Below, piece after piece: positions 4,411 to 61,199 of a DNA stretch of 64,000 nt. Numbering within the stretch: position 1 is the first letter of the stretch; each line of letters starts with the position of its first letter. A program made the translations under genes and the position numbers. Source of the DNA: Mytilus trossulus (taxonomy: Eukaryota); assembly GCF_036588685.1 (NCBI RefSeq), contig NC_086385.1, forward strand, positions 4,402,001 to 4,466,000, given 5' to 3'. The notes below the pieces were generated by a model. That model saw only the letters and a list, made by a program, of their open reading frames with translations, was not told the origin of the DNA and did no database searches.

Positions 4411-4619
4411 ATTCCTACGTTAGGAAGCTTTGATAATAGTAGGGCGACTCACATTTTTATTATATTTAAAACAAAGAGCATCGGAAAAACTTTGTTTGTC
4501 AAAGTATACTAAAATCTTTCTGAAGAAATACAATGAAATTTATACCAATGATCCGCATTAACATGAATCTGTCGACTTTATTTTTGTTGTCATCTGAAAA
4601 GTCTAAATGTTAACGTTAA

Positions 4620-5697: not shown

Positions 5698-5721
5698 GTA
5701 AATATGATACATTTCACTATA

Positions 5722-6002: not shown

Positions 6003-6274
6003 AGAAGATGTGATATTATTAACAATGATTTAACTTTCAACAAGAGACTAAAATGATACAGAAAATTACGGCCTTCAACAATGAGTAAATACTGTATAGT
6101 CACATATAACAGGCAAAGAACTCAAAAATGTAAAAACATTCAAACTGGAAAACTATCGGCAAAATCAAAGTACACACATATGAATGACTAGCTAGAATTG
6201 ATTAGAAATAACGAGATATCTTAAGTTTGCTAATTCACCAGGCAATTTTTTATATACAAACAAAAACATAATAC

Positions 6275-6625
6275 AATTGAGAATGGCAATATGAAATATA
6301 TCAAAGACACAACAGCTCGACCAAAGAGCAGACAACAACCATATGCCACTAATGGGTCTACGATGCAGCGAGAAACTCCCGCACTCAGAGGCGTGCTTCA
6401 GCTGGCCCCAAAACAACATGTATGCAAGTTCAGTGATAATGGACGTCAAACTAAATTCCGAAAGATTCTTACACAAGAAACTAAAATTAAGAATTATACA
6501 CGAATACCAAAATTCAGAGTCTCCTGACTTTGAACAGGCGCAAAAATGCAGCCGGGTTAAAAATGTTTTTTGAGATTTCAACCTCCCAAACATACTTCTA
6601 GCCAATGTAGAAAAAACACAAGAAT
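6275..6625 (+). mobile_element. Dispersed repeat family A (diverged copy)
   Basis: Colinear with 22520-22860 and 58640-59103 (aattgagaatgg...cttcagctggcccc...cctgactt..acaggcgcaaaaatgc...gccaatgtagaaaa). Confidence 0.75.
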
Positions 6626-20300: not shown

Positions 20301-20625
20301 CTGGCGTGGTCCTTTGTGATGTTATAAAACTGTAGTGTGGTCCTTTCTGCTGTTATAAAACTCTAATGTAGTCCTTTATGCTGTTATACAATTCTAACGT
20401 GGACCATTGATTTGTTATAAAACTGTAGCGTGGTCCTTTGTGCTGTAATAAACTCCAGCGTGGTCCTTTGTGCTGTTTTTAAACTCTAGTGTGGTCCGTT
20501 GTGCTGTTATTAAACTCTAGTGTGGTCCTTTGTGCATTTATAAAACTCTAGCGTGGTCCTTTATGCGGTTATAAAACTCTAGCGTGGTCCATTGTGTTGT
20601 TATAAAACTGTAGTTTGGTCTTTTG
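8316..20625. repeat. 12.3-kb intronic satellite, 31-bp monomer (about 400 copies), with higher-order structure
   Basis: Consensus TTATAAAACTCTAGTGTGGTCCTTTGTGCTG. The diagnostic variant GGACCATTGATTTG recurs at about 400 and 370 bp spacing. Confidence 0.98.
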
Positions 20626-36430: not shown

Positions 36431-37557
36431 ATTAAAGTACAAGCCTGGTATCCTTGATAACTATTAGCAAACACAACCCACTTACTACTAACAAGGCTAT
36501 TGCTCTGTAAATACACCAGAACAGTAAAAACTCGTGATATCAGGACTTTTTAAAAGTGAAGGGTGTTACTATATCTTGAAGTAATGTTGATAATAGTTGA
36601 TACATTGAATCAATTTTTGTAGTTTGCAAGATAATGAACAAAATCAGTAAAAATCGTGAATATAGACAATAACTCCTAGAAGCGATTTCTGGCATTGGTT
36701 TATTTTGCAGACATTGTCTTGCTTGTCATATTTGCATATTTAAGTTTCTATCTATTATAGTTTTCAAAGATAGAAGCTAAAACGTTAAAATATTTAAAAA
36801 CCGTCATTAAAACGCAACAATTAAGATGAGGAACCGTCTGAGAATATCGGGATCATTTGACATACTTGTAGATCTTGTCTTCCCGATTCCTTTACTTAGT
36901 GTATGCCTTTTAAAAAATGTCTGCATGTATTATGATTTTGAATACACACTAGTTAAACATGAAAGGTGGATAAAACTTGTCGTTTTAGAGAAAGGAGTCG
37001 TATTGTGGTTATGACTTAATTGGATTGTAGGTTATTTTTAAGATTCTGAAAATTTCTGTCTTCTTTTTATGCCTTTTATCAAAATAATATAAACAAACTT
37101 GCATTTTACCATGTGAGCCATGTTTTTTTGCAAGCTTGGGTCAATAGACATAACTTTAAAACTAGATAATGATGATTTTGGTTTATAGACGTTTGGTTAC
37201 ATTTGGTCTAGTCATTTTAGAGGAGAAGATTTTGGTAAAAGTAAACAGACAATGGGCGTCAAGTGACGCGATAACTCATTGTTATACCTTTTAGCACGGT
37301 GCGTTTACATACAAAGAATGATTTCATATAATAATAACCCATGTTGCATGCGTGTTATACCATTTGAAGCTTTATACATGTACATATACATCTTACATGG
37401 TTGAATTGGAATAACAGTCATGAAGAGTTTTGGTAATACATGTAGTTAACAGACAACGGGCGTCAAGTGTTTTGCCATTTGAAGCTTAATACATGTACAT
37501 ATACATCTTACATGGTTGAATTGGAATTACCTAATTGGGTTATAAGTTATACATTGT

Positions 37558-37898
37558 CTACATATTTGAATAGCAGTCATGGAGAGTAGAAATATCAATA
37601 CTAGTTACATCTGTTTGTTCTATCTGATTTGCAAGATCTGCATAAATCTCATCAGAACGTAAAGCATTTAGAAATTCTATAAAGCATTTCTCCCCACAAT
37701 GCAATAGTCGATCCATCAACTTCCTGTTCTTTTCAGTCTGTGCTGGACAAGCCTCTATTGTTTGCTGGTCATCTATTGTGAATACTTCACACGATATCAA
37801 ATGATCTACTATGGCTTCGTGTTTGATGGTAGATATGATATCTACGTAATTCTTCTGCAGTCGTACCTTATGTAATGGAACAGTCCATGCTGATAATC
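37558..37898 (-). CDS. ROCO terminal exon, CARD 2
   Basis: HKVRLQKNYVDIISTIKHEAIVDHLISCEVFTIDDQQTIEACPAQTEKNRKLMDRLLHCGEKCFIEFLNALRSDEIYADLANQIE. Acceptor ttttcag. Confidence 0.85.
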
Positions 37899-40800
37899 CT
37901 GAAAAAGGTCAGAAGAAAAATATTATTATATTTAGCACAATGACAAAGAAAACTTACATGAATATAAAAACAATTTCAAAGATCCTTCATTAATTTCAAA
38001 CATGACACAAACAGCAATATATTAATGCAACTACCATGACTCTATGTTTATATAAAAATCTTTCTTGCAATCAAGAAAATATTACAATTTTGACGTATTC
38101 CTCGATGTCAGAACATTCTGTATAATTGATTTTACTGTGAGCTATTAATTTTATGAGTCATTCAAGAAACTCTGATGCATTGGTTGCTTTATTTTTACTT
38201 CCGTGAAAAACAAGACGCGAAATTGAGTTGAAATATAAAAACAAAATGTCCAGCATTTAAAAATTAAAAAAATCCGTTTCATACATGCCAGTAGACAATT
38301 ACATTTTAGTTTTCATCCATTTTAGAATTGTCAGTTGATGGAAAACAAACACTATTCGATTAAAATACTTTAAATTTGTTGAATCCATAATTTAAAGACT
38401 TTAAACTACGTTCATACAGCCTCGCCATAAATTGTCATGCTGATTTGTAAAAAATATGCTTAGATAAGAAATGTATACGAATGCAATTATTTGAATAATA
38501 ATAACTGGGAAACTACATTAATCATAAACAAACGAATACCTTCCTTTTGTGCCGTTCTTATACATGGTGTATCTACTGTGACATTTTCGAGATCGCTGCT
38601 GAGTAGATCAGCAATATTATTGTATCCGCTCTCCCGCAAAGCATCTATGAATACCTTAAACATGGTACGATTCCTATCAATAATTATATCTAACAACGCT
38701 TTATTTTGTTCAATCTGTTTGACATGTTGTTCGATATGGCGTCTGTCATCAATGGATAAGCTGCAGTGGGTCATCATTTGGTCCAAGATTTGGCTTACCG
38801 ATATTTCCTGTATGATAATCTGATAATGGCGTCTGATGTTGACTTCGAAGGTATTGGGGATAACTTCTGTAATTTTAGAAACTAAAGATGTTATAACATT
38901 CGAACGCACTAACGTCCTATAAATATTAATTATAAGTTTATTAAACATTTGAAATAATTCAATTTGCCGATCTGTACAAAATAAATATGATAATGTTTTA
39001 TCATGCTTGCGATCAGAACACAAATTAATAAACGAGTATCATACAGGTTATAGGCCACGGAACCGAAAAAGTGCCCCCCCCCCCAAAAAAAAGAGAAATA
39101 AAACGACAAGATAAATAATAAATACAATGATTCTAATTAAATCTTCAGATTCAGCAACATCGAATCGTGGGGTGAACTTAGATGATCCTAGTATATGGTA
39201 TGCAATTCATGTTTCATTTAAATTAACTGTCATATGTAAAATCACCTGAGGTCGATTCGAGCAAGAGAGAAGCGGTCGTGGACCTCTTGAATTTCGAAAA
39301 AGAGACATCAGTTTGGGATGAAGTACGTCAGCCTAGTTGATCGCGTCAAATCCCGAATCTCGAACTCTTTGAAACAATATGAAACTATTTGTTTCTTGAA
39401 TTCACGAAGCAAAGTAATATAAATGTAATACATATTAAAGTAGTTATCAAAGGTACCAGGATTATAATTTGATACGCCAGACGCGCATTTCTTCAACGTG
39501 AACAATTCATTTTTTGTTGTTAATTAAAAGGCAAAGATAGGAATATACTTACCATTGTTTACCTTCTTTAGACATTTTAAGTTAGGAATGTACTTACCAT
39601 TGTTTACCTTCTGTAGAAAGCTAAAGGTAGGAATATACTTACAATTGTTTTCCTTCTGTAGAAAGCTATTTTAGGAATATACTTATAATTGTTTACCTTC
39701 TGTAAAAAGCTAAAGCTAGGAATATACTTACCATGGTTTACCTTCTGTAGAAAGCTAACGTTAGGAATATACTTACCATTGTTTACCTTCTGTAGAAAGC
39801 TAAAGCTAGGAGTATACTTACCATTGTTTACCTTCTGTAGAAAGCTATTTTAGGAACATACTTATAATTGTTTACCTTCTGTAGAAAGCTAAAGTTAGGA
39901 ATATACTTACCATTGTTTACCTTCTGTAGAAAACTAAAGTTAGGAATGTACTTATCATTGTTTACCTTCAGTAGAAAGCTAAAGCTAGGAATATACTTAT
40001 AATTGTTTACCTTCTGTAGAAAGCTAAGGTAGGAATATACTTACCATTGTTTACCTTCTGTAGAAAGGTAAAGCTAGGAATATACTTACCATTGTTTACC
40101 TTCTGTAGAAAGCTAAAGTTAGGAATATACTTATAATTATTTACCTTCTGTAGAAAGCTAAAGCTAGGAGTATACTTACCATGTTTTACCTTCTGTAGAA
40201 AGCTAAAGGTAGGAATATACTTACCATTGTTTACCTTCTGTAGAAAGCTAAAGCTAGGAGTATACTTACCATTGTTTACCTTCTGTAGAAAGCTAAAGCT
40301 AGGAGTATACTTACCATTGTTTACCTTCTGTAGAAAGCTAAAGGTAGGAGTATACTTACCATTGTTTACCTTCTGTAGAAAGCTAAAGGTAGGAGTATAC
40401 TTATAATTGTTTACCTTCTGTATAAAGTTAAAGCTAGGAATATACTTATCATTGTTTACCTTCTGTATAAAGTTAAAGCTAGGAATATACTTATCATTGT
40501 TTACCTTCTGTATAAAGTTAAAGCTAGGAATATACTTATCATTGTTTACCTTCTGTATAAAGTTAAAGCTAGGAATATACTTATCATTGTTTACCTTCTG
40601 TAGAAAGTTAAAGCTAGGAGTATACTTATAATTGTTTACCTTCTGTATAAAGTTAAAGCTAGGAATATACTTACCATTGTTTACCTTCTGTAGAAAGCTA
40701 AGGCTAGGAGTATACTTATAATTGTTTACCTTCTGTATAAAGTTAAAGCTAGGAATATACTTACCATTGTTTACCTTCTGTAGAAAGCTAAAGCTAGGAA

Positions 40801-43800
40801 TATACTTACCATTGTCTACCTTCTGTAGAAAGCTAAAGCTAGGAATATACTTACCATTGTTTACCTTCTGGAGAAAGCTAAAGTTAGGAGTATACTTACC
40901 ATTGTTTACCTTCTGTAGAAAGCTAAAGCTAGGAGTATACTTACCATTGTTTACCTTCTGGAGAAAGCTAAAGTTAGGAGTATACTTACCATTGTTTACC
41001 TTCTGGAGAAAGCTAAGGTTAGGAGTATACTTACCATTGTTTACCTTCTGTAGAAAGCTAAAGTTAGGAATATACTTACCATTGTTTACCTTCTGTAGAA
41101 AGCTAAAGGTAGGAATATACTTACCATTGTTTACCTTCTGTAGAAAGCTAAAGCTAGGAGTATACTTACCATTGTTTACCTTCTGTAGAAAGCTAAAGGT
41201 AGGTGTATACCAACCATTGTTTACCTTCTGTAGAAAGCTAAAGCTAGGTGTATACTAACCATTGTTTACCTTCTGTAGAAAGCTAAGGTAAGGAATATAC
41301 TTACCATTGTTTACCTTCTGTAGAAAGCTAAAGCTAGGAGTATACTTACCATTGTTTACCTTCTGTAGAAAGCTAAAGCTAGGAGTATACTTACCATTGT
41401 TTACCTTCTGTAGAAAGCTAAAGCTAGGAATATACTTACCATTGTTTACCTTCTGTAGAAAGCTAAAGCTAGGAGTATACTTACCATTGTTTACCTTATG
41501 TAGAAAGCTAAAGCTAGGAGTATACTTACCATTGTTTAACTTCTGTAGAAAGCTAAAGCTAGGAGTATACTTACCATTGTTTACCTTCTATAGAAAGCTA
41601 AAGCTAGGAGTATACTTACCATTGTTTACCTTCTGGAGATAGAAATCATAATCGTTTGCTTCAAACATTTCAGTCGTTATCTTCTCATACTTTCTAACGA
41701 ATGAGTTCTTTTCGATTTTTTTCTCAGATCTGATGAACACATTTGCCAAAACATTTGCAAGAGCAATGGAAGATTCTTCGCTTATTTTGGAATGATTCTT
41801 GAGTTCAGTGAGAACAAAACGCCAACGTTGAACATCATCGCCAATACTTATTTCCGAGTCTTCATTTGGACAGTTTGAACTTGCCCACTTTCCAGTAGTT
41901 GGTATATATTTGTTTTGTAGTTGGAAAGAAGTGAACAGAGATCGAGATGTCAAGCTAGTATTTCCTACGATATCGAATCCATCAGATTTTAAATGCTCTG
42001 CCATTATTTCCGGCATCAAGTCTGTAACTGATTTTGCTAGTCTCACATAATTCAACATTTCAGGATTCAATTCTTCCTACAAAATACAAGCGAAGAACAT
42101 TACAGGACACGAAATGACCACAAATTAAAGAGTTTAATGGAAGGATAGATCTTTGAAATGATTATTGCACAACTTAATATTTTTTAAATGTTGTTCTTTC
42201 ATAAACATTACATAAACTGTATACAAATTAAAATTTTCCGACCGTACAAAATCCTTATAGGTCGTTAAAGTCGTTAAAAACCACACTCATTACAATAGCA
42301 AAACATCTAATAATGTAACCATGTTTGGTATGTAAATACATTATGTATATATACCTTAAACCAAGAGTGTAATAATGTAACCATGTTTGGTATGTAAATA
42401 CATTATGTATATATACCTTAAACCAAGAGTGTAATAATGTTACCATGTTTGGTATGTAAATACATTATGTATATATACCTTAAACCAAGAGTGTAATAAT
42501 GTTACCATTTTTGGTATGTAAATACATTATGTATATATACCTTAAACCAAGAGTCTAACAATGTAACCATGTTTGGTATGTAAATACATTATGTATATAT
42601 ACCTTAAACCAAGAGTCTAATAATGTAAGCATGTTTGGTATGTAAATACATTATGTATATATACCTTAAACCAAGAGTCTAATAATGTAACCATGTTTGG
42701 TATGTAAATACATTATGTATATATACCTTAAACCAAGAGTCTAATAATGTAACCATGTTTGGTATGTAAATACATTATGTTTATATACCTTAAACCAAGA
42801 GTCTAATAATGTAACCATGTTTGGTATGTAAATACATTATGTATATATACCTTATACCAAGAGTCTAATAATGTAACCATGTTTGGTATGTAAATACATT
42901 ATGTATATATACCTTAAACCAAGAGTCTAATAATGTAACCATGTTTGGTATGTAAATACATTATGTATATATACCTTAAACCAAGAGTCTAATAATGTAA
43001 CCATGTTTGGTATGTAAATACATTATGTATATATACCTTAAACCAAGAGTCTAACAAGTCTTTTGAATTGTGAAGTACTGCGTGCTCATCACAAAAATAT
43101 TCTTCGTCAGACTCTAACTTTGTCATTTCCATCATTCCATTTAAGTTGTCGTAGCTTCCATTACAACACTTCATTTTCACAGTGTACGATACATTCATTT
43201 TGTATCTCCCTTTTATGCCAGTTATGCAGGCTTCTGCATGTTCCCAGATACCTTTGAATGAGATCTGGGAATGCTTGCCCCATTTCCAGATCTGAAGGAG
43301 TATCACGTGTTTGCTAACACAAACTGCCAGCTTAGTTAGGCCTGATGAATCGAGATTAAAGACCCCCATGCCGCGGTACAGTGCTGGTCTTCGTCTATGT
43401 TTTGATGGTTCTAGACTTATCTGATAACGGCGTATGTAATTTACAAGAAAATGGTTGAAAAACGCTGGAGGAAGAAAATCAAAATGCATACATATCCAAG
43501 ATGTCCTGTTAAAATCCTTCCCATCAACTTTAAAACTGTCCACTATATTTCTAATGGGTTTTGATTTGATGAGACATGGCACATAATAACTAACTGTTGG
43601 TATTTGTGATTTGTTGATTACGTCATTTTCTTCTAATGCTGATACAGATTCTTCCTCAGCCATGTTAGGTTTCACAATTATATCAAACTTTTCCATTATT
43701 TGTAGAATGTGACTACGGTATTTAAAAAAACCTGTCCCCTCTTCTTCTCCTCTAAATGCTTGTGTAATCAAATCTTCTGTCAATTTACCTGTTGTTTCTA

Positions 43801-46800
43801 ACTCTTTCCAGTCAGAGTTGTAAACAATGTTTCTTTGGATCTGGAACTTCCTCGCTGACACAAGACATTTCAACACATCAACTAACCACTGTGGTTGCAA
43901 AATAACTAAATCTGGAATGTCATCAAAGTAAATGAGATTTCCTATTTCATGTTGATATCTAAGAAACAAATTCACTTCGTTCATGTCTTTGATATCAAGT
44001 CCAACCGATTTCCCTACAGATTTCATGTCCTCATATGTCATGACTTTATTTTGGTTTTCTCTGTGTTGATCCAGGACTTCTTCATACTTAATCCAACGAG
44101 TCGGAAGTTGTTGTCCCCATGTTTCAACTTTTGAAGCTAGTTGTACAATACGGTGCCGAAGGACGTCAAAGTCGGTTTCAGAGGAAGTAGTGTTTGACAG
44201 CATTATAAAATCTTTTATGTGCTTTCGTTTCGGATGGTCTCCTAATATTTCATCAAATTGTTTTTGAATTTCCCATTTCCTTGTTTCCTTATCAATCTAC
44301 AAATAATGTAGTTAAAACATAAATAAAGGTTACAGTAGTATACCGCTGTTCAATAGTCACAAAACGATTAAGCGAACAAATCGGGGCCTAAAACCAAAAC
44401 AAGGAAACCCTATATATATATAAGAGGAAAACATTGGATCGAAATTACATAAACACTGAACTGCTACAAAAACATATACCAACATACTTTAATAGACACA
44501 GACAATTGGATAACAAATGTCAGATTAATAATTTTTTTAAAAAGCATGCACCATGTTTAATTTCTTTACTACTTATATACATGAAGAGAACTTACAAAAT
44601 ATTTAACAGCAAACATACATTATTTAGTTGCTTGTATCTAACACCAGGTTTCGAATAGTGGTATAATTTCCTTTGGATTAAATGCAGGGGCAAAAATGTA
44701 TTTAAACTTTTCTATGGTAATCACTTAATAACACACGACTCACATTATATTCCATTTAATGAAAATCGTAACCTCCTTATGTATAATGTATTTCAACCGT
44801 GGAATGTTTTATAATTTACCACATAAATTCGATGGGCAACTCATAAAGTCTTAACTAAACTGTTTACACAGAGATATGGCTCGCCTTATTTTATCATGAT
44901 AGTAAAGTGCAAATGTTGATATTTTTAATGCCATACTTTAACATGTTTAAACGTACAAAATCAATGAGACATGACTGAGAGACCACACAATACATGTTAA
45001 AACAAGGTATGCAAATGTCAGTACAACTACGTACCGTATGTTATTGATTAGTTATTCGTGGTTCCCATTAAACTAAATTGATGAAAATGCTATTCATTTT
45101 AAGTTGTTTTAAATATATACAGCCACTTGCAATATCAATATGGTCCAGTTTATTTGTTGAAACTAAAGTTATGTATAATATACCTGTAATTTGTCGCAAC
45201 ATGTTCCAACAACAATAATAGAGGGAAGTGTTTCTTTCGTGTTGTCGATTGCCTCTTCTTCATCACCATAACAATGGATAGCATCCATCCAAAAGTTTAT
45301 GTATTCTGTAAAAATACCATAGCAGATCAAAATAAATTAAAAAAAATTAAGCCATCACCACTAACATATACATGATATAATTTGTTTTTACACGTTGATA
45401 TAAACACATAACTGAACTCAATATGGAACAGGAATGACTGTGATCAATCTAAAGACTAGCCGTGGAATCATTCCATACGAACGTTACTTATAAGGACATG
45501 AGTTATAACTTACTTACGCATAAAAGTTTTTGAAAGTTAAAAATAGACACTCTATCTTAATAGGATATCGAATATATATTATACTTTCTTTAGAATTGAG
45601 TTCGAACTCAATAAAATTGAGAATTGAAATTAGGAAGGTCTCAAAAAAGACAACATACCAACCAAAAAGCAGAATTCATCCGAAGGCCACTAATGGGTTT
45701 TTAACATAGGGAGAACACTCCGCACCAGAATGCGTGCTTCAGCTGGCCCCTAAACCAAAAATGTGTACTAGTTCAATAATATTCAACGTCATACTAAACT
45801 CCAAAATTATAAATGAAATCAATATGTAAATGTTAAAAATCATACGTGAAAACAAACAAAGTCCAGAGCCTCGGGACAGGCGCAAAAATATGACGGGGGT
45901 TAAACCTGTTTTTTAAGGTCTCAAACCACCCCTCCACCTCTAGCCAATGTAGAAAAACAAACACACAGCAATATTATACGCACAGTAAAACTCAATTTTA
46001 AAAGAAGTCCGAGTATGATGTCAGAGAAGGTAACAAAATAGATATAGGAAGATGTGGTGTGAGTGCCAATGAGACAACTCTCCATCCAAATAACAATTTA
46101 AAAATTAAACCATTATAGGTTAAAGTACGGCCTTCAACACGGAGCCTTGGCTCACACCGAACAACAAGCTATAAAGGGCCCCAAAATTACTAGTGTAAAA
46201 CCATTCAAACGGGAAAACCAACGGTCTAATCTATATAAACAAAACGAGAAACGAGAAACACGTATATATTACATAAACAAACGACAACTACTGTACATCA
46301 GATTCCTGACTTAGGACAGGTGCAAACATTTGCAGCGGGATTAAACGTTTTAATGGGCCCAAACCTTCTCCCTTTTTCTGAAACAATAGCATAACATCAC
46401 AACATATAAAAACATACGATAAAATATCAATTAGCAGACTTAACTCAATCAAAAAACGTATGATTACACAAAGAACGAATAAATTTGATCTGCGATATCT
46501 GAATACAAATGCACAGTTAATTAAATATTAGAGACAAACAGTCATGACCAAAAGGCTATCAAATAAATTCAAACACACTGAGAAATATTTAACCAATCAA
46601 TGTTCACTTTAGAAAAAAAAACGGTTTTTTTATAATCTTGAAGTTTATACAAATGTTGTAAGAATAAGTGAAAAATTGAAGATATTACAAATAATCAAAG
46701 CTGGTATACAGCCAAGATCCATATAAATAAAAAATGACAAAAAAGCATTATAAACAGTATCAACAGGTCGAATTAACAAGAAAATACGATTTGAGAGTAC

Positions 46801-49567
46801 TCGCAGTTACTGACAGCTAGTTAAAAGACAAAGCAAAATGACAATTATACATAAATTAACAAAGGACTACTAGCAGTTACTGACATGCCAGCTCCATACC
46901 TTAATTAAACTAATTGAGTGGTTCTGACGTCATCATATGAATATCAAGAGTACAATTTTTTTTGAGACGAACATAACCCGTGTCATGCCAACAAGATATT
47001 ATATTTCCAATAAGAGAAAGAACAACACAGTATAGTATAACAAAACCAAGCGTTATGACATATAGACATAAAGGACCACTTGTGGAGTTGACTAGACCCA
47101 TAGACATGTGTTACGGGAAGATGGAAAAATCAACGTGCAGAGGTAGAACAGTATACCAACCTCATTTAACGTCTTGGTAAAAAGAGACAGTCATTATCAT
47201 AGGTTTTTCTCAATGCTTATTAACATTTACCTCCAATGTCCTCAAATGGAATCTCGGACAAATCAAGAAAGTTCTCATCTACATCTTCAGATGTCATCAA
47301 TCCTTTTAAGTTCTTACTAACATCAATAACCAACAAATAAATAGCATGTTTATTTAAAAAGGTTTGGTGTGTTGCGTAGAATTCGTATTGACCAGCGAAA
47401 TCTAAAAGTGCCACTTCAGCGAAGTCCTCTAATGATGCTTCTGATTCGGACCAACCTTTCAGGTCAGAATATAAATCAGCATTTTGTACCTCAGCAGGTT
47501 CTACAAGACCATCTTGTAGTTTAGTTATGATTGTTTCTGTGTTTTCATATTTTTCGTTAACAGCAGTCAAAGTCGAGAGACTTTTTTTGTTCATTTTGTC
47601 TCCAAGCGTCTCTTCGTCTAGAGATAATTTAGTAATTTGATCTTTTTGATCATGGGAATAGGTGTTTACTGCCTTAACGTATTTTTCTGAGACAGAAGAT
47701 ATATGTGACAGCTCTGCTTTTGTTTTATAGTGTGTCTCTCCTTTCAGATGGAGGATCAACAGGTTCTTTGCTAATCTTGATTTTCTTCCTTGGTTTACAT
47801 CAAAGCGAATGTCTATAAAAAAAAATTCTTCTGAATATAACGTACTTGTAATTACAGGTTGGGAAACAAAATGATATTGTTAATTTACAAATGACATTAA
47901 AACTAAATATGCCAGAATCGATAAATTCAATTTTGAAATTAAAGAGTATTCAAAACCAATATTCTAAAACTGTGTTTTAAATCAGCAATTTATGAAAGAT
48001 GATGGATAATGTGTTTCTGATAATTTAAAGCTAAATTAACAGTTGATGTACCGAAAATATAATATCTTATGCTACCACAAGAACACGAACTGCATGTCTA
48101 ATAACCTGCACAGCAACACCACGCTAAACATCCGTGGCTTAAGCCCTATAATGCTATCAGGTTTTTATTGCAACATAACAAACGGCGCCAACAATTCTTG
48201 CCCATGAATGTCATTCATATACAAATATAAACGTTTTGTTTACAAATAGAACTGAACAAAAAAAAACATATCATTCATAACATTTAAGCAAGTTTTTATA
48301 TCCTTTGCAAATAACAAAAAATTGTGTTAAGACTTTATAATGAAACTCTATGAAGTGTACTATTTACAATTAAATCATAAAATGCTTACCTTGAGAAAAA
48401 ATCCAAGTATCATCTGTTAAACATACTTTACATTTTTGAGTCATGATGTCTATGCCATTCGTGCTTGTTACATCTGATATTTGTTTTCTTAACAATTTTC
48501 TGGTAAGGCACGTTTTCCCTACACCGAAAGGTCCCACAACCGGTAAACGTATCATGTATCTATTTTCGACACCGCTTTGTAAAATTTCTCTGTACTGTTC
48601 TTCTGCTGCTTTTCCCATCTTCCAAATAGTCAGTGGTATTTGATCTGTGGCAATAAACGACAAGAAATAAAAGGATGTGAAGTGGTTTACATGTTTCTCT
48701 GTTAGCGATCAAACACTTCATTCTCAGTAACAGTCGCGTGACAAAACAAGCCAACTGTTAACTAAAGACTATACAAAGCATGATTCCCTCGCCTGCATCT
48801 CCACCAATAGCAACGTTTTAGTTAGGATTACATGTACCATTAAGCTGAATAACTCTATTTAAATGTTAATGACCATTTCAGTCATATTGACCTATTTTAA
48901 GATCTTATCCTACTCTGCATGTTTCCTTTTAAAAGTTTCTTTTTTCTGTTATAGTTTTCAAGATAATAGGTTAAACTGCATAGATAATGGCAAAGTTTTA
49001 ATTGGAGATTATCTGTATGAAAGTAAACAGACGACGGAAACTAAGCGATGGCAACAAGAATGTTGAAAAATGGCTTCAATCATCGAAAATGCACTAAAAC
49101 GAACACGCATACTACAAGATTTAGCAAAATACCAATCTGATAGTACGAATACATTTTATCATTATAATTAGGTCGATACCTTTACCGATGGGATGTTTGT
49201 CCATTATGATATCACAAGCAAGTGCCTCGGTACTGGCATGGACATATGCATATTATGATAAAACTTAAGATATTATATGACTGTCAATTAGACACCCATC
49301 AACCAGCGACCAAATGACGTAGATATAAGCAATACATATGGTTTTACTAGTTTTGAAATCTGCTGTTAAAATCTGAAAATCATTGAATATACAATTTAAT
49401 ATTTCAGACTGTATCACATCTTTTGTACAGTATTAGTTTTCAAGGTTTGTTTTAAGAACTTTGTAATGTTCAAGTCTTACCATCTTCAGAAAATTGAAAC
49501 TCTGTAAGCTGCGATTTGAATAGTTTAAAATCACATATTTCCTTATCCTCTAAATATTCCTTTATTT
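37558..49567 (-). CDS. ROCO protein: Roc GTPase, COR, degenerate DZIP3-like HEPN, CARD, CARD (at least ~1150 aa, 5' end unresolved). Exons 49567-49481, 48644-48390, 47812-47231, 45305-45184, 44296-43037, 42076-41620, 38908-38540, 37898-37558.
   Basis: P-loop VVGPFGVGKT, G2 STNGID, G3 LLDFAGQYEFYATHQTFL, G4 region FWMDAIH...IIVVGTCCDK, COR LPTRW...FLRYQHEIGNLIYF...VILQPQWLVD, HEPN-like NYVRL...SIGDDVQRWR, and two six-helix CARD-like repeats. GT-AG sites are phase-compatible. The acceptor at 38908 is the least certain. Confidence 0.88.
38540..38908 (-). CDS. ROCO exon, CARD 1
   Basis: IRRHYQIIIQEISVSQILDQMMTHCSLSIDDRRHIEQHVKQIEQNKALLDIIIDRNRTMFKVFIDALRESGYNNIADLL. Donor g|gtattc. Confidence 0.85.
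39530..41640 (-). repeat. About 50 copies of a 42-bp minisatellite made of the HEPN exon end plus GTAAGT donor
   Basis: Minus-strand unit ctacagaaggtaaacaatg|GTAAGTatactcctagctttagcttt. The first copy is the real exon end at 41620. Confidence 0.95.
41620..42076 (-). CDS. ROCO exon, DZIP3/hRUL138-like HEPN domain (degenerate)
   Basis: EELNPEMLNYVRLAKSVTDLMPEIM...KYIPTTGKW...PNEDSEISIGDDVQRWRFVLTELKNHSKIS. Confidence 0.65.
42305..43052 (-). repeat. 12 copies of a 62-bp minisatellite made of the COR exon end plus GT donor
   Basis: Minus-strand unit gactcttggtttaag|GTATATatacataatgtatttacataccaaacatggttacattatta. The motif ccaagag recurs every 62 bp from 42361 to 43043. Confidence 0.95.
43037..44296 (-). 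CDS. ROCO exon, end of Roc plus COR domain
   Basis: 1260-nt open phase 0-0 exon containing the 404-aa ORF, with COR motifs and MEKFDII, YYVPCLI, FLPPAFFNHFLV. Confidence 0.92.
45610..46995 (+). mobile_element. Repeat family A (45610-46040 and about 46828-46995) with a long family B copy nested inside (46041 to about 46825)
   Basis: Family A is contiguous across this junction in the 58640-59103 copy. Family B matches 61425-61640. Confidence 0.75.
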
Positions 49568-52749: not shown

Positions 52750-55400
52750 TATTTTAATACTGTAGTATTTATATGAGGTCTAATTCTCATAAAAAAAATA
52801 TTATATATATATATTATCATTGATATTTTCCTCTGAAATTTTCTCAAAAATAGACTATCCGGATGATACAGCATTTGTGTTTCAATTTCATTTTTTAGAA
52901 CTGACAACATGTTCACAAATTTAGTTCTCTTTTCTGATAAATAAAAACATTTATAAATCACAAAACAAATCATTGTTATGATTTGATTAAGTGGATTCTA
53001 TTCAATATCTTCAACTGTATGTCCAATTACAAGATTTTTAAGACAGAAGACATGTTTATCTATATTAAAATACATGAATATGTCATAAATTATTGACCAA
53101 TAATTTTTTACCCATTTACATTCAACGAAAAAGTTATTATAGTTGTCACATTTGGAACAAATCACACAATTTGGATTATCAGATATTTTCCAACGATGCA
53201 AATTACGATTAATTGCTGTAATATTATGCAGTAATTTCCATCTAGACATTTTCATTCTGTTATCTTTTAAAAAATGGAATGTAAAAGTAAGGTTCTTCTT
53301 TATAAAATAAGTAACGTTATCAAAAGTGAAATGATTTTTCCATACATAGAATCCAACTGGGAGCTCTTTATTAGATCTAATTAAAATATTATATATTTCT
53401 TTGAGTGAAATTTTGTCCAGATTGTAATACAATCCATGGCTATTCATCTGTATATCTTGTTGAAAATTAATTTTAGTATTTGTAGATGTTTTACTCTTTA
53501 ATTTTTATTTCCAAGATTTGGGTATAGCTTTACGTATAATACATGTTTCTGCTATCCAATTTTGTTTCCTTTTGTCTAGAATGTTTTGAGAAATTTCTCC
53601 TTTATTGTCGATTATGTCATTAATAAAAATTATATCTTCTTCTATCCAATGTTTAAAATACAAACTTTTGCCTTGATTTTTACTAAAATGTATATCCCAG
53701 AATTTAAAGTTCATATGCTATGTTTTAATAAAGGTCAAAATATGCAGCTGTTTGGCATACTTTCAACTTTTATATGCCTCGCAAACTGAGTTTAAACTTA
53801 TGATATAATTCTATAAAACCCATCACTTTGAGTTTTCCTCAGAATTGAATTTAGCCGCTATCCATGTATATAATATATACAAGTAACATTCACAAGTATA
53901 TCATGGAAACAGTAGGTAAACAGTAGGTACATTTTGTTTTATCTATGAATATTATATACATGCATCCCCACACAAAGAGGCGTGCTTTGTGAAGCAGCTG
54001 TACTTATAAAGTGCAATTTATAAGAACTTTTTATTATATTCGTAATCATATATTTTGTAATATTTTTACAAGCATTCTACTATACCTTGTATGTTGTATT
54101 TTTCTGTATCACGTACAATCCATTCCAACAGGTCTCTCTTCAGACTTTTATTTACTTTACTCAGACTTTTGTAAAGTATCTTTGAAGGATCTGCACTAGA
54201 TTTTTCTATTTTTTCTGTCCAATACCTAAGGATTTGCCAAAATGGATTAACCACTATTTTATGTTTAGCTAGTGATAAGGTATTTTTGTTAAATCCAATT
54301 TTGACACAAAATGCTACCCAGTCCTTTTTATTAACAGGAAGAATCTTTTCTACTATAAATGTACGCAGAAAGTGTCTTGCTGAAAATAAGAATGTAGTAT
54401 TTAAAGGTCGATATTAAAATGCTGAAATGATAAAACAGTCTTTGTTCCAAAAACACAAACAAATTGTCTCTGTCAAAGTTAATCTGACAGAGACTATTTG
54501 CTTTTCCATGATAGAAAATCTTTTCGTGTTTTATATCCTCACAACATTTCTTGGTCATTTTGTGAGTTTAGGTATAGAATACATTAGAATATTGCTGAAG
54601 ACTCTATACAGTTTTTCTGCAGCTTGAAACATCCCTCATTTGTTTTTATATTTGGTGGAAAATTGTTTGATTGGCAATCATACTTCATTTTATGTTTTTT
54701 GTTGTTGTCATGATTCAATGCATTTAAAGATTGAATATTCAAACTATATTCTTATACAAATCATGACACATGTTACATGTTGGAGTTCATTGAGTGTTGT
54801 ACCTTGGAGTATATAATTCTGTGGTATCTTATGCATGATCATAACGGTAAGAATATTAAAGCTCGTAGTTTTCTCCTTGATTCATTTTCTTATGAGGTTG
54901 ATTTGTATAAAGAAGTTAATTTCATCCTTTCCAATTCCAGTTCTGCTACAAAGATTACGTCCTCTCACTGATAATTCAAAGTTACTATGTGGAACCATCT
55001 TGAATTATAGGTAAGATATACAGTATGTGCCTCACATCTTGTATCATATCAATATATAAGCCAGACATAGGTAGTCTTTTGAAAGCTAAATTGTATGTCA
55101 ACACATTTGATTGCAGCTTTCTTATTGTTAACAAACTCATTATTTCTATGTAACATAATTCCAATAAGGCTCACAAATGATGTTTACATATGTACCTACA
55201 AGTTATTAATATTTTCAAGATTTTGCGTCATCCATTATGATTTTCCTGATACAGAGTTGTTAAATATCAGTATGATTTTAAACATAGGTTTCAAATGATT
55301 AAGTTGAAGTTATTCCCTTTAAGTTCACAGACATGACTATTTTAAGTTGATCTTTATAGAATATCAAAGAATTACAATCCCGTCTTTTTTCCATCGATTT
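52750..55400 (-). mobile_element. Degraded L1/Tx1-like LINE
   Basis: zf-RVT-like RWKLLHNITAINRNLHRWKISDNPNCVICSKCD...FFVECKWVKNYW and LYFKHWIEEDIIFINDI...AIPKSWK. The upstream boundary is approximate. Confidence 0.7.
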
Positions 55401-59730: not shown

Positions 59731-59806
59731 CATTTTCAAGTACATTCATCTTTAAAACGAAGGGAATATTGTTCTTCTCATATTTGAAGGCCACACCAGT
59801 TGCAAC
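59731..59806 (-). CDS. Exon following the Rho-like domain (phase 0-1)
   Basis: tcttctcatttcag|VATGVAFKYEKNNIPFVLKMNVLENG|gtaaga. Strong splice sites, and the phase matches the exon at 60700. Confidence 0.7.
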
Positions 59807-60699
59807 CTGAAATGAGAAGAGTTAGAATTGATGTATTCGTGTATTATGTAGGATAATTATCGTCTTTTTAGAAAACTCATTTAAAAACAAATATTACAAC
59901 TTTTACTTTATTTCAAATACAGTATTTCGTTTTATTAATAGCAACTAACAATCAATCGTTTGATGACTAAAATGCAAGCTCTACTGGTATCCCAGTAAAT
60001 AGTATGTATTTATTGAAAAGCTAATTAGCATACTCTTCAGTAGCTTGAACTATTTTTTGTACTTTCTATTTCAGTAAAGAGATAAAAGCAGTCAGTCTAT
60101 TTACAGTGTCAATAAATTGTTATCAATCCAATATATTGATAGAACAAGAATAGTGTCATTTTAAGTTTGAAATGTTATCTTTAAAAAAACCTTTTTGGCA
60201 ATGAAACGTGGGGTCAATTTTAAACTACACTGCAAGTGTAGTTTTTTTGATGTACCTTTTGACACACAATTACTAGTGATGACTTTGTGTTGTTGGTGTT
60301 ACTGCTAAAGGGATTTAAAAGCGTTGATTGTGTTCATTTGTTTTGTGTGATGCAATTCCCGGTTTCTGATTTAATATGCTTAGGTAACCGCTTTTACACT
60401 CTAACAGAACAGCAAAAGAAGCATTTCATTCTTAAATCGAATTGTCAGTACTCGTTCTATGAATCAAAGGAGATGAAAGTAATACACACATAAGACAGTT
60501 ATCAAACTATGAAAATAACAGAAAGACTCATAAAAGGAATAATTGTGTACAATATTGAAAAACAAATAGCATATGTCCTCACAATTTACCAAAAGTTTTA
60601 CTTCGTATTGAGTATAAGAATGAAGTACATATTGACAAAACGCGTAAAATAAGTAAATAAACTGACACATAACGTATGATGTTCTTTTATAATACTCAC

Positions 60700-60860
60700 A
60701 GCTGCGTTCAAACATGCTTCTATCCCATATCCAGTTTCAGCAGATGTTTCAAAGTATTCCAAACTGTGTCTTTTACAGATTACATCTATATCTTTTTGCA
60801 TTACTGGCATTTGTTTCATTTTTTTCAGGTGAGCCAAAATACGTTCATCATCACGGGATT
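60700..60860 (-). CDS. C-terminal part of a Rho-family-like small GTPase domain (internal exon; earlier exons not found in the window)
   Basis: ttttgtcag|ESRDDERILAHLKKMKQMPVMQKDIDVICKRHSLEYFETSAETGYGIEACLNAA|gtgagt resembles RhoA [20 protein letters not shown]...YMECSAKTKDGVREVFEMA (Rho insert helix plus G5). Confidence 0.8.
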
Positions 60861-61199
60861 CTGACAAAAGGGAAACGGATAAAGAGCATGACAAATCCAT
60901 ATCATATTGTAATCAATGTTAAGACAATTGTTTTATGTACTGATTGTACTGGTTGTTTATGTCGTTCTTTAGTTCACCAGCACAGTAGTCAGCACTTTGG
61001 TGTTGACATGAACATCAATATATGTATGGACATTGTTATAAAAACCCGTTTATAAACGTCGACATTTTTGAAAAACTATGGATATTCTTATCCCAGAAGT
61101 CGATTACCATAGCTGGTTTTTGCACAACGTTTTGGGAATATTGGTTCCTCAATGCTCTTCAACTTTGTCCTTTTTTGGCTTTTTAACTGTTTAGATATG

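What the first reader, a model, noticed from the sequence alone, without database searches (positions are those of the whole stretch)
37558..49567. ROCO protein with C-terminal HEPN-like domain and tandem CARDs: candidate GTPase-switched immune or cell-death receptor
Seen: an intact multi-exon frame encoding Roc-COR followed by a HEPN-like domain and two CARDs. No kinase or LRR is visible in the window. Established: ROCO proteins (LRRK2, DAPK1, MFHAS1) dimerise through COR, DAPK1 has a C-terminal death domain, and tandem CARDs nucleate signalling filaments in RIG-I, MDA5 and NOD2. Inference: a functional analogue of NLR/RLR receptors in which a Roc-COR switch replaces the NTPase or helicase and exposes 2xCARD. 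I do not know a characterised protein with this architecture.
Basis: partly seen in the sequence, partly recalled or inferred. Interest (0 to 1): 0.8.

Follow-up and report, generated by a model that had tools for sequence, protein, structure and literature searches.

The report
Mussel ROCO GTPase with twin CARDs
This is a real, spliced and transcribed mussel gene for a kinase-less Roc-COR GTPase followed by a degenerate HEPN domain and two CARDs; it belongs to a very large, uncharacterised bivalve gene family that probably signals in immunity or cell death.

Summary
On the minus strand, 37558-49567 carries eight GT-AG exons with consistent phases. They encode Roc (3 exons), a complete COR, a 152-residue helical domain and two CARDs.

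- **Already annotated.** All ten exons tested (these eight plus two upstream) match a public NCBI protein exactly: 'uncharacterized protein LOC134693963 [Mytilus trossulus]', 1247 aa.
- **One transcript.** Contigs from four public runs cover exons only and carry the COR>HEPN and HEPN>CARD1 joints in 4 of 4 runs. CARD1>CARD2 appears in 1 run, plus a loose end in a second.
- **HEPN-like domain.** Pfam does not see it directly. It aligns (hhalign 98.8%, E 1.3e-16) with in-genome exons that hit Pfam HEPN_DZIP3. The Rx4-6H arginine is replaced by leucine in 18 of 18 clade members, so it is probably not an RNase.
- **The gene runs further upstream.** A weak death-like exon lies at 54379-54086 and a linker exon at 59806-59731. 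Rho-like GTPase exons may lie further up.
- **Large family.** At least 150 COR-A loci occur in this genome. Bivalve relatives carry Death, HEPN, OTU, TIR, Ank or SH2 around Roc-COR.
- **Precedent.** A 2014 review predicted ROCO proteins with CARD or death domains in Trichoplax.

No function is shown. The most likely role is a GTP-gated death-fold signalling scaffold. This scan met relatives of this family before, on other DNA of the same genome.

The parts
59731..59806 (-). Linker exon. It holds the ATG (at 59749) with which the public model P0168 starts. It has an AG acceptor and an open frame upstream of that ATG, so it may be an internal exon.
   Evidence: tblastn of P0123/P0151/P0169/P0173. 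One search places the ATG at 59749 and shows AG before 59806. The donor G|GT was read from the sequence: my first end, 59732, was one base short.
54086..54379 (-). N-terminal death-like domain exon (tentative)
   Evidence: Exact match to P0168 residues 8-104, with AG/GT sites. Pfam Death E 0.012, 16.2 bits, below the 22.6 cut-off. Homologous region of P0165 scores 36.2 bits, best stretch 40-112. hhalign against C-terminal bivalve death domains was not significant.
49481..49567 (-). Short connecting exon. It is the first exon inside the finding's range.
   Evidence: Sequence read; matches P0168 from residue 106. The lower end was corrected from 49490 to 49481 by reading.
48390..48644 (-). Roc exon 1: P-loop (G1) and switch I
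   Evidence: Pfam Roc E 1.4e-4 and Ras 3.2e-3. Exact match to P0168 from residue 135.
47231..47812 (-). Roc exon 2: a long insert of about 150 residues, then the DxxGQ (G3) motif
   Evidence: Pfam Roc E 1.5e-5 at residues 154-189 of the frame. Exact match to P0168 from residue 220. dN/dS 0.49 against the C9 paralogue.
45184..45305 (-). Roc exon 3: G4 region
   Evidence: No Pfam hit on its own. Exact match to P0168 from residue 414. phmmer finds it in 50 of 150 family representatives.
43037..44296 (-). End of Roc (G5) plus the complete COR domain (COR-A and COR-B) in one exon
   Evidence: Pfam COR-A 53.3 bits. AF2 model pLDDT 81.3. Foldseek 3dpt_A E 2.3e-14 over 368 columns. dN/dS 0.14.
41620..42076 (-). 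Degenerate DZIP3-type HEPN-like domain, with leucine in place of the Rx4-6H arginine
   Evidence: No Pfam hit. hhalign 98.8%, E 1.3e-16 to in-genome HEPN_DZIP3-type exons. Motif table. AF2 model pLDDT 83.5, all-helical. Best VIA match is the Csm6 HEPN region, Z 7.4, which lies within the noise range for helical bundles. dN/dS 0.36.
39533..41639 (.). 45-bp tandem array, 46.9 copies. It starts inside the last bases of the HEPN exon, so it repeats that exon's donor site. It fills most of the HEPN>CARD1 intron.
   Evidence: TRF. Transcript contigs use the first donor: joint 41620|38866 in 4 of 4 runs.
42306..43054 (.). 62-bp tandem array, 12.1 copies. It overlaps the last 18 bases of the COR exon and its donor.
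   Evidence: TRF. Joint 43036|42075 in 4 of 4 runs.
38540..38866 (-). CARD 1
   Evidence: Pfam CARD 3.9e-10 and CARD_2 5.5e-9. Best natural PDB relative by sequence is the Apaf-1 CARD, E 9.3e-6; a de novo designed protein ranks first. dN/dS 0.30.
37558..37898 (-). CARD 2 and the stop codon (TAG, 37560-37558)
   Evidence: Pfam CARD 5.1e-14. Best PDB relatives are NOD1 CARD E 2e-6 and Apaf-1 CARD 1.8e-4. dN/dS 0.12.

Best explanation
**What it is.** The stretch is the larger part of gene LOC134693963 of the mussel Mytilus trossulus. The product is a kinase-less ROCO protein of at least 1247 residues. Its order is a probable death-like domain, a Roc GTPase with a long insert, a complete COR, a catalytically degenerate DZIP3-type HEPN domain and two CARDs.

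**Shown.**
- The exon structure and the domain identities.
- Splicing of COR to HEPN to CARD1 to CARD2.
- Purifying selection on every exon.
- Membership of a very large bivalve ROCO expansion whose members swap N- and C-terminal modules.

**Inferred mechanism.**
- Roc-COR acts as a nucleotide-dependent dimer/monomer switch, as in other ROCO proteins.
- The switch controls how close together, or how exposed, the death-fold modules are.
- The N-terminal death-like domain would take input from a DD-bearing upstream partner.
- The paired CARDs (four per COR dimer) would recruit or nucleate a CARD partner, such as one of the CARD-prodomain caspases expanded in Mytilus. The output would be cell death or inflammatory-type signalling.
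- The HEPN domain has lost the arginine of its RNase motif yet stays conserved. It more likely serves as a regulatory, dimerising or RNA-binding module than as a nuclease.
For: **Gene structure and identity.** 10 of 10 exon bodies match P0168 exactly. The organism follows from contig length 63,222,996.

**Domains.**

**Transcript joints.**
- 43036|42075 and 41620|38866 in 4 of 4 runs.
- 38539|37897 in 1 of 4 runs. A second run has a 10-letter loose end that is the reverse complement of the first bases of the CARD2 exon.
- Intron depth is 0 outside one dispersed repeat.

**Purifying selection.** dN/dS is 0.08-0.49 in 7 of 7 exons against the paralogue at C9:49.08 Mb, which has the same exon order.

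**Motif loss is fixed in the clade.** 18 of 18 clade sequences lack R[NS]xxxH, while 9 of 9 other Mytilus post-COR domains keep it.

**Family context.**
- COR-A matches >=150 places above cut-off (343 candidates, 150 scored).
- There are 1116 cluster representatives at E<=0.001.
- 8 bivalve relatives scanned show Med25-, SH2-, PARP14-RRM- or Ank-Roc-COR-Death, Roc-COR-HEPN_DZIP3 (85 and 91 bits), Roc-COR-OTU and Ras-Roc-COR.
- TIR- and Ank-Roc-COR occur in Mytilus.

**Possible partners.** 12 M. coruscus caspases have CARD prodomains (PMC10967218, passages read).

**Related ideas in print.**
- Variable effector domains C-terminal of AP-GTPase/COR are described for bacterial conflict systems (PMC8195603, passages).
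- ROCO-TIR/DD proteins were proposed as a GTPase TLR cascade in Aplysia (PMC9334734, passages).
Against: - No experiment or expression-after-challenge data were seen, so an immune or cell-death role is inferred from domain content only.
- No sensor-type repeat is present.
- The N-terminal death-domain call is weak: 16.2 bits, below cut-off. The hhalign test failed (probability 1%), and P0151 gave no Death hit at E<=0.01.
- The G4 motif of Roc is unusual: TCCD where other family members have T[HW]KD. GTP binding is untested.
- The structure search for the HEPN-like model gave only noise-range scores: Foldseek found nothing at E<=0.001, and the best VIA Z was 7.4.
- The runs are labelled 'RNA?' by guess. 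Their contigs are 88-100% alike, so some may come from alleles, sister species or paralogues.
- No single listed contig spans all four exons.
- The true 5' end (Rho-like fusion or not) is unresolved.
Confidence: 0.55

Rival explanations
1. The protein is itself the sensor, an NLR/RLR analogue: a ligand (for example RNA bound by the HEPN-like domain, or a pathogen effector acting on Roc) flips the Roc-COR switch and releases the 2xCARD to nucleate signalling filaments.
For: - The tandem CARDs sit at a terminus, as in known 2xCARD receptors (recalled).
- HEPN domains are RNA-directed, and bivalve NACHT proteins often carry DZIP3-type HEPN (PMC9646362, passages).
- The family shows the copy number and module shuffling typical of immune receptors.
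- Brown-alga ROCOs have been proposed as immune receptors (PMC11378527, abstract only).
Against: - No repeat-type or helicase-type sensor is present.
- The HEPN motif is degenerate.
- A death-like domain in front of Roc suggests input from another protein.
- Nothing is known about ligands.
Confidence: 0.2
2. The polarity is reversed. The CARDs and the death-like domain recruit the protein to an upstream complex, and the HEPN domain is the effector, still cutting RNA through non-canonical residues (two arginines just upstream and the conserved histidine).
For: - Relatives end in an intact HEPN_DZIP3 directly after COR, the effector position (P0098 85.4 bits, P0103 91.2 bits).
- 9 of 9 such Mytilus domains keep R[NS]xxxH.
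- The window's motif region is itself conserved, and the histidine is kept in 17 of 18.
Against: - The canonical arginine is leucine in 18 of 18, and one residue is inserted before the histidine.
- dN/dS for this exon is higher than for COR or CARD2: 0.36 against 0.14 and 0.12.
Confidence: 0.1
3. A decoy or buffer, or simply one of many recently shuffled family members without a distinct role. It would bind CARD or DD partners without signalling, like CARD-only inhibitors.
For: - The family is very large with many near-copies.
- One of the two close paralogues (C9:46.03 Mb) has a TAG inside its COR exon.
- Presence/absence variation is common in Mytilus (recalled).
Against: - All 7 tested exons are under purifying selection.
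- The architecture is kept in five Mytilus species.
- The gene is transcribed and correctly spliced in four runs.
Confidence: 0.13
4. Artefact: the CARD exons belong to a different gene, or the locus is a pseudogene.
For: Long introns are filled with tandem arrays that copy the donor sites. Older gene models stop after COR (P0001, P0151).
Against: - Joints link COR>HEPN>CARD1 in 4 of 4 runs, and CARD1>CARD2 in 1 run plus a loose end.
- Frames are intact and splice phases consistent.
- dN/dS is below 0.5 throughout.
- NCBI models with the same order exist in five species.
Confidence: 0.02

Closest known systems
DAPK1 (human ROCO protein)
   Same: Roc-COR core combined with a death-fold domain; linked to cell death. 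Some Mytilus relatives are even named 'death-associated protein kinase 1-like' (P0153).
   Different: - No kinase, calmodulin-binding or ankyrin part here.
- The death-fold output is two C-terminal CARDs rather than one death domain.
- A HEPN-like domain sits after COR.
- A death-like domain sits in front of Roc.
LRRK1/LRRK2 and Chlorobium tepidum Roco
   Same: The COR fold matches these structures: 3dpt_A E 2.3e-14, LRRK1 8e05_A 1.6e-10, LRRK2 8fo9_A 9e-8. Roc comes directly before COR.
   Different: No LRR, kinase or WD40. Sequence similarity is too low for phmmer against PDB sequences. Roc carries an insert of about 150 residues.
Predicted Trichoplax adhaerens ROCO proteins (Civiero et al. 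2014 review, PMC4104024)
   Same: ROC-COR flanked by CARD and death domains. At least three have a Ras-like domain N-terminal of ROC, the same idea as the possible Rho-like extension here (passages read).
   Different: These are in-silico predictions in a placozoan. No HEPN and no tandem CARD is mentioned in the passages I read. I did not see the figure, and I did not test homology to the mussel genes.
Aplysia and sea-anemone ROCO proteins with TIR or death domains
   Same: Kinase-less Roc-COR joined to innate-immunity adaptor domains in invertebrates (PMC9334734; PMC5094078).
   Different: Those carry TIR, LRR, Mbt, EF-hand or death domains. CARD pairs and HEPN are not reported in the passages read.
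Tandem-CARD receptors RIG-I, MDA5 and NOD2
   Same: Two adjacent CARDs at a protein terminus controlled by an NTPase module. CARD1 has a weak sequence match to the second CARD of MDA5 (E 0.006), and CARD2 matches NOD1 (E 2e-6).
   Different: - The switch is a Ras-like GTPase with COR, not a helicase or a STAND NTPase.
- The CARDs are C-terminal.
- There is no RNA-binding CTD or LRR.
- The closest natural CARDs by sequence are Apaf-1 and NOD1 types.
RAIDD/CRADD adaptor (DD plus CARD)
   Same: Combines a death(-like) domain and CARD in one chain, which would allow DD-side input and CARD-side caspase recruitment (function recalled; PIDDosome abstract PMC4133880 seen in the listing).
   Different: RAIDD is a small two-domain adaptor without an enzyme core. 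Here about 900 residues of Roc-COR-HEPN lie in between, and the DD call is weak.
Bivalve DZIP3/hRUL138-like HEPN domain proteins (pearl oyster)
   Same: The same HEPN subfamily is expanded in bivalves and fused to NTPase switches (PMC9646362, passages). Roc-COR-HEPN_DZIP3 exists in unionid mussels.
   Different: In the pearl oyster, 194 of 202 keep Rx4-6H. The window's domain and its 17 clade relatives do not, and Pfam's model does not detect it.

Membership tests
ROCO proteins | Roc (Ras of complex) GTPase domain | tested here: met
   Pfam Roc scores 22.5 and 25.7 bits on the two exon halves, each below the 27-bit cut-off, and 40.8 bits on the identical public protein P0168. GxxxxGKT and DxxGQ are present in the exon translations. 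G4 reads TCCD.
ROCO proteins | COR domain directly C-terminal of Roc | tested here: met
   Pfam COR-A 53.3 bits against a 35.3 cut-off. The model of the exon matches the whole COR of C. tepidum Roco (3dpt_A E 2.3e-14, 368 columns), and all 32 hits at E<=0.001 are ROCO chains.
ROCO proteins | Guanine-nucleotide binding/hydrolysis and COR-mediated dimerisation | not testable with these tools
   Needs protein biochemistry.
DAPK / LRRK subfamilies | Protein kinase domain (plus Ank/CaM or LRR/WD40) | tested here: not met
   No kinase, LRR, WD40 or Ank hit on P0168 at E<=1 or on any exon.
HEPN superfamily, DZIP3/hRUL138-like family (PF18738) | Match to the family profile | tested here: inconclusive
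   There is no direct Pfam hit at E<=1. Homology is indirect: hhalign 98.8%, E 1.3e-16 to in-genome exons, of which 5 of 6 hit PF18738 at E 1e-7 to 3e-4 and 1 of 6 is above the 27-bit cut-off.
HEPN superfamily, DZIP3/hRUL138-like family (PF18738) | Rx4-6H catalytic motif | tested here: not met
   Leucine stands at the arginine position and one residue is inserted before the histidine, in 18 of 18 clade sequences. 9 of 9 other Mytilus post-COR domains keep R[NS]xxxH.
HEPN superfamily, DZIP3/hRUL138-like family (PF18738) | All-alpha HEPN fold | tested here: inconclusive
   The model is all-helical, pLDDT 83.5. Foldseek found no hit at E<=0.001. The VIA top hit is the Csm6 HEPN region, Z 7.4. Four further rows (6tug, 2hsb, 4pqz, 3o10) are HEPN entries by title or, for 6tug and 4pqz, by my recollection. 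All lie in the noise range for helical bundles.
CARD (death-fold superfamily) | Match to the CARD profile, twice | tested here: met
   PF00619 scores 40.0 and 52.5 bits against a 23.9 cut-off. PDB sequence matches include Apaf-1 and NOD1 CARDs.
Death domain (PF00531), N-terminal | Match to the Death profile | tested here: inconclusive
   The window exon scores 16.2 bits, E 0.012, below the 22.6 cut-off. Relative P0165 scores 36.2 bits with its best stretch at 40-112, a region that aligns with the window exon at 60% identity. hhalign against bivalve C-terminal death domains was not significant.
RIG-I-like receptors / NOD-like receptors | DExD/H helicase with CTD, or NACHT with LRR | tested here: not met
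   None of these families hit P0168. One exon gave only a sub-threshold nSTAND3 P-loop match, E 0.11.

The most novel reading that the evidence does not exclude
In bivalves, Roc-COR GTPases form a third large class of intracellular immune switches beside STAND (NLR) and helicase (RLR) receptors. In this subfamily a COR dimer would present four CARDs, about one helical turn of a CARD filament. A GTP-controlled change of the dimer would then seed a CARD-caspase or CARD-adaptor filament, a 'ROCO-some'. The RNase-dead HEPN domain would be kept as the RNA-sensing element. The tandem copies of the donor site behind the HEPN exon would offer a way to make CARD-less, stop-terminated isoforms.
Probability: 0.2. 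Interest if true: 0.8.

Novelty: new variant of a known kind. Interest (0 to 1): 0.5.

Why it matters
ROCO proteins are studied mostly through LRRK2 (Parkinson's disease) and DAPK1, and what Roc-COR does as a switch is still debated. This gene belongs to a mussel family of at least 150 COR loci. In that family the same Roc-COR core is wired to death, CARD, TIR, HEPN, OTU, SH2 or ankyrin modules. That is the pattern expected of an innate-immunity or cell-death switch.

A kinase-less member with a simple read-out (two CARDs) would be a convenient system to test how nucleotide state and COR dimerisation control an output. It could also show whether animals use ROCO proteins the way they use NLRs.

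For mussel biology, it adds candidates for the large, variable immune repertoire of a farmed and invasive group.

Tried and rejected
**Rejected or corrected readings.**
- I first read an ATG at 49672 as the start codon. I rejected it because the next exon would then begin with an in-frame stop. Three database models splice the 54-kb exon to 49567.
- My first ends for two exons were wrong (59732 and 49490; one search showed GG and CT in place of GT). I corrected them to 59731 and 49481 by re-reading.

**Searches that gave nothing useful.**
- Direct Pfam detection of HEPN in the window exon and in the two C9 paralogues failed.
- A profile of the domain against PDB sequences gave nothing (best E 0.91).
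- Foldseek of the HEPN-like model gave nothing at E<=0.001. VIA scores were in the noise range.
- phmmer of the COR exon against PDB sequences found no ROCO chain. The fold search did.
- hhalign of the N-terminal death-like exon against bivalve death domains was not significant.
- The protein atlas gave no usable hit for the C-terminal module.

**Fusion of the upstream Rho-like GTPase exons could not be settled.**
- Reading phases allow it.
- One NCBI M. galloprovincialis model (P0164) and four other gene models (P0123, P0151, P0169 in part, P0173) fuse them.
- The M. trossulus model starts in the linker exon, and no fused M. trossulus protein of 482-1535 aa turned up.

**Literature.** Seven searches found no paper on a ROCO-HEPN-CARD protein or on a Mytilus ROCO expansion. 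Domain tables in the supplements of PMC9646362, PMC9334734 and PMC10967218 may list such architectures.

Window sequence was searched exon by exon, and the full-length form used was the public protein P0168 as returned.

Full report
**What is in the sequence.** The gene lies on the minus strand. Stop-to-stop frames and the list of AG/GT sites with their phases give eight exons inside the finding's range:

| Exon | Coordinates |
|---|---|
| Connector | 49567-49481 |
| Roc, P-loop | 48644-48390 |
| Roc, long insert and DxxGQ | 47812-47231 |
| Roc, G4 | 45305-45184 |
| End of Roc and COR | 44296-43037 |
| Helical domain | 42076-41620 |
| CARD1 | 38866-38540 |
| CARD2 | 37898-37561, stop TAG 37560-37558 |

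In one search the acceptor was AG at all ten exons tested. The donor was GT at the seven whose ends I had set correctly. Two ends were off, and I corrected them by re-reading.

**Domain checks, exon by exon.**
- Roc: E 1.4e-4 and 1.5e-5. Each half is below Pfam's cut-off because the domain is split.
- COR-A: 3.6e-14, 53.3 bits, above cut-off.
- CARD: 3.9e-10 and 5.1e-14, both above cut-off.
- The 40-codon Roc exon gave no hit.
- The fifth domain gave nothing relevant.
- I never joined the exons.

**The gene is already annotated.**
- A search of 1.84 billion cluster representatives with the COR exon found 1116 proteins at E<=0.001.
- The nearest named ones are Mytilus proteins.
- A word search with the C-terminal 371 residues of a close relative returned 23 proteins. 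All 23 are from five Mytilus species, and 20 of the 23 carry both COR-A and CARD in their precomputed Pfam lists.
- One of them, P0168 ('uncharacterized protein LOC134693963 [Mytilus trossulus]', 1247 aa), sits on a contig of 63,222,996 bases. That is the length of the window's own contig.
- All ten exon bodies occur in P0168 letter for letter. The window is therefore M. trossulus, and the spliced product is a public, uncharacterised model. The LOC-style name suggests a RefSeq pipeline model; that is my inference.
- On P0168, Pfam gives CARD (81 bits, two stretches), COR-A, CARD_2, Roc (40.8 bits) and Ras, with no kinase, LRR, WD40 or ankyrin.

**One transcript or two.**
- The look-up of sequencing runs listed 20 runs holding half or more of the COR exon's words. 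Their kind is only guessed as RNA.
- I laid four of them, from four coded organisms and four studies, on 37500-43400.
- Contig depth is confined to the exons and to one dispersed repeat at 39273-39666. All other intron bins read 0 or near 0.
- Joint 43036|42075 (COR to HEPN-like) is present in 4 of 4 runs, and joint 41620|38866 (HEPN-like to CARD1) in 4 of 4. Both have CT..AC ends, which is GT..AG on the minus strand.
- Joint 38539|37897 (CARD1 to CARD2) is listed in 1 of 4 runs. In a second run a 10-letter loose end at 38539 is the reverse complement of the first bases of the CARD2 exon.
- Exon-only coverage with exact splice joints is what cDNA gives, so I take these runs as transcriptomes (inference).
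- The contigs are 88-100% like the window. Some may stem from alleles or sister species, and no listed contig spans all four exons.
- The refutation test 'CARD exons belong to a separate transcript' therefore fails.

**COR.** phmmer against PDB sequences found no ROCO chain. A model of the exon built on 26 in-genome paralogues (pLDDT 81.3) matches the COR domain of Chlorobium tepidum Roco (3dpt_A, E 2.3e-14, TMt 0.68, 368 columns). The next matches are LRRK1, LRRK2 and Methanosarcina Roco2. All 32 hits at E<=0.001 are ROCO chains. The exon thus holds COR-A and COR-B.

**The 'HEPN-like' domain.**
- A six-frame search of the genome with this exon gave 24 places: itself, two close paralogues on contig C9 (75 and 74% identity), and 21 distant exons of similar size.
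- The distant exons carry a motif of the type ...RIRLTRNELQHS.
- 5 of 6 of them scanned hit Pfam HEPN_DZIP3 (E 1.1e-7 to 3.4e-4). One is above the cut-off and one has no hit. The two close paralogues have no hit.
- A profile of the window's clade against a profile of the distant exons gives 98.8% probability, E 1.3e-16, over 137 columns.
- The catalytic signature does not hold. All 18 clade sequences read RWRF[VI]L[TN]ELK[NS][HQ]SK, with leucine at the arginine position and one extra residue before the histidine. 9 of 9 other Mytilus post-COR domains keep R[NS]xxxH.
- The AF2 model is all-helical (pLDDT 83.5). Foldseek finds nothing at E<=0.001.
- In the wide VIA search the top row is the HEPN region of Csm6 (Z 7.4, rmsd 2.8 Å, 97 residues). 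Four further rows (6tug, 2hsb, 4pqz, 3o10) are HEPN entries. These scores lie in the range that the tool itself calls common for helical bundles. The fold evidence is compatible but not decisive.

**CARDs.** By sequence, CARD2 is nearest to the NOD1 CARD (E 2e-6) and Apaf-1 CARD (1.8e-4). For CARD1 the top row is a de novo designed protein (6.1e-7), then Apaf-1 CARD (9.3e-6), with a weak match to the second CARD of MDA5 (0.006). The two CARDs are about 27-30% identical to each other (cross-hits).

**Upstream of the finding.**
- Database relatives map collinearly onto two further exons.
- Exon 54379-54086 has a weak death-domain signal: Pfam Death E 0.012, below cut-off. The 60%-identical region of M. 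edulis P0165 scores 36.2 bits. My own profile test failed.
- Exon 59806-59731 contains the ATG used by P0168. It has an acceptor and an open frame upstream of that ATG.
- Further up lie three exons of a Rho-like GTPase: 60861-60694 in the window, and about 5.8 and 6.9 kb beyond its end in L025. This domain has a P-loop one residue short and a degenerate G4.
- Phases allow an in-frame fusion. One NCBI M. galloprovincialis model (P0164, Ras 144 bits plus Roc, COR-A and CARD) and four other models fuse them. The M. trossulus model does not, and a search found no fused M. trossulus protein.
- I leave this open.

**Is it functional?** The paralogue at C9:49.08 Mb has the same seven exons from Roc to CARD2 in the same order. 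Against it, dN/dS per exon is:

| Exon | dN/dS |
|---|---|
| Roc 1 | 0.08 |
| Roc 2 | 0.49 |
| Roc 3 | 0.10 |
| COR | 0.14 |
| HEPN-like | 0.36 |
| CARD1 | 0.30 |
| CARD2 | 0.12 |

Every part, including the RNase-dead HEPN, has been kept by selection. The other paralogue (C9:46.03 Mb) has a TAG in its COR exon.

**Family context.**
- Pfam COR-A matches at least 150 places above its cut-off in this genome (343 candidates, only 150 scored). The window's COR exon finds 117 matches at E<=1e-20 (476 candidates, 100 scored). Nearly all are single exons of about 400-450 codons.
- The CARD2 exon finds 66 places at E<=7.8e-22, self included. Most are on contig C5 at 72-85 Mb, where many COR hits also lie. 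I did not pair them one by one.
- 10 of 10 sampled close relatives (31-38% identity) are Mytilus proteins.
- Of 10 sampled distant ones (26-30%), 7 are named: 2 from Potamilus, 2 from Sinanodonta, and 1 each from Mizuhopecten, Mercenaria and Saccostrea. The other 3 are unnamed.
- Pfam on 8 of these 10 shows the following architectures:
  - Med25-Roc-COR-Death
  - SH2-Roc-COR-Death
  - PARP14-RRM/KH-Roc-COR-Death
  - Ank-Roc-COR-Death
  - NHL-Roc-COR-HEPN_DZIP3 (85.4 bits)
  - Roc-COR-HEPN_DZIP3 (91.2 bits)
  - Roc-COR-OTU
  - Ras-Roc-COR
- Mytilus also has TIR-Roc-COR and Ank-Roc-COR members.
- The slot after COR is thus a general effector/adaptor slot. HEPN directly after COR is an old bivalve combination, and the window's subfamily (three loci here) has added two CARDs and lost the HEPN motif.

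**What is in print.**
- A 2014 review reports at least 17 predicted Trichoplax ROCO genes whose products include CARD and death domains, and at least three with a Ras-like domain N-terminal of ROC (PMC4104024, passages).
- ROCO with TIR or death domains is described in Aplysia, where a 'novel GTPase TLR signaling cascade' is suggested (PMC9334734, passages), and in sea anemones (PMC5094078, passages).
- Variable effector domains behind AP-GTPase-COR are described for bacterial conflict systems (PMC8195603, passages).
- DZIP3-type HEPN expansions, 194 of 202 with Rx4-6H, are described in the pearl oyster (PMC9646362, passages).
- Twelve M. coruscus caspases have CARD prodomains (PMC10967218, passages).
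- None of my seven searches found a paper on a ROCO-HEPN-CARD protein or on the Mytilus ROCO expansion. The library is partial and supplements were closed.

**Earlier notes of this scan.** Searches show that related ROCO genes were met before on other DNA of this genome: ankyrin-Roc-COR-death(-CARD) genes, and a TNFR-like transmembrane Roco. Those follow-ups reached the same family-level view. I counted the family independently.

**How it most likely works.**
- *Shown:* the architecture, the splicing, selection on every exon, and the family context.
- *Established for other ROCO proteins (recalled, not tested here):* COR mediates dimerisation, and the nucleotide state of Roc changes the dimer.
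- *Inferred:* this protein is a GTP-gated death-fold scaffold.
  - Input would come through the N-terminal death-like domain, or through the Rho-like domain if it is fused.
  - Output would go through four CARDs per dimer, which recruit or seed a CARD partner such as a CARD-caspase.
  - The HEPN remnant would act as a regulatory or RNA-binding module.
- I put the scaffold reading at about 0.5-0.55, the receptor reading at 0.2, HEPN-as-effector at 0.1, decoy or neutral copy at 0.13, and artefact at 0.02.

**Verdict.** This is a real, intact, expressed and already annotated but uncharacterised gene. It is a new variant (HEPN remnant plus tandem CARD) within a known kind (ROCO proteins with death-fold modules) and one member of a striking bivalve expansion. 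It is interesting mainly as an entry point to that family, not as a unique object.

Noticed in passing
window 39533-41639 and 42306-43054: Both introns that follow the HEPN-like and COR exons begin with tandem arrays (45 bp x 46.9 copies, 62 bp x 12.1 copies). The arrays start inside the last bases of the exon and so repeat the donor splice site many times. Transcript contigs use the first donor. An in-frame stop lies 30 bases past the HEPN exon's donor, so use of a later copy would give a CARD-less product. An M. edulis gene model (P0169) reads about four 45-bp units as coding. The paralogue on C9 has an intron of only about 900 bp here.
   Followed up: partly
window 60694-60861; L025 (window end +5.8 kb and +6.9 kb): Three exons of a Rho-like small GTPase lie directly upstream on the same strand. 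It has its own ATG, a P-loop one residue shorter than in relative P0164, and a degenerate G4. The reading phase allows fusion through the linker exon to the ROCO gene. The exons are fused in one NCBI M. galloprovincialis model and four other models, but not in the M. trossulus model.
   Followed up: partly
whole genome G000 (clusters on C5 72-85 Mb, C11 52-70 Mb, C13 24-27 Mb, C8, C12, C29, C39): There is a very large ROCO expansion. COR-A matches at least 150 places above Pfam's cut-off (343 candidates), and 66 CARD2-type exons match at E<=7.8e-22. Bivalve relatives show at least eight different domain combinations around Roc-COR.
   Followed up: partly
window 8324-20625: A 12.3-kb satellite: 31-bp unit, 397 copies, 79% matches. 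It explains the strong GC and AT skew of this part of the window.
   Followed up: no
window 39273-39666: A dispersed repeat inside the HEPN>CARD1 intron. Contig depth is 500-6600 in four transcriptome-like runs, with many loose ends on both sides, so it is probably an expressed mobile-element fragment.
   Followed up: no
window 53001-53717, minus strand: Two adjacent open frames (168 and 70 aa) lie in the intron between the death-like exon and the connector exon. By eye they resemble the tail of a retrotransposon ORF; this was not tested.
   Followed up: no
G000:C9:46029944-46031191: One of the two close paralogues of this gene has a TAG inside its COR exon (85% identity). It may be a pseudogene or a variant allele.
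   Followed up: no
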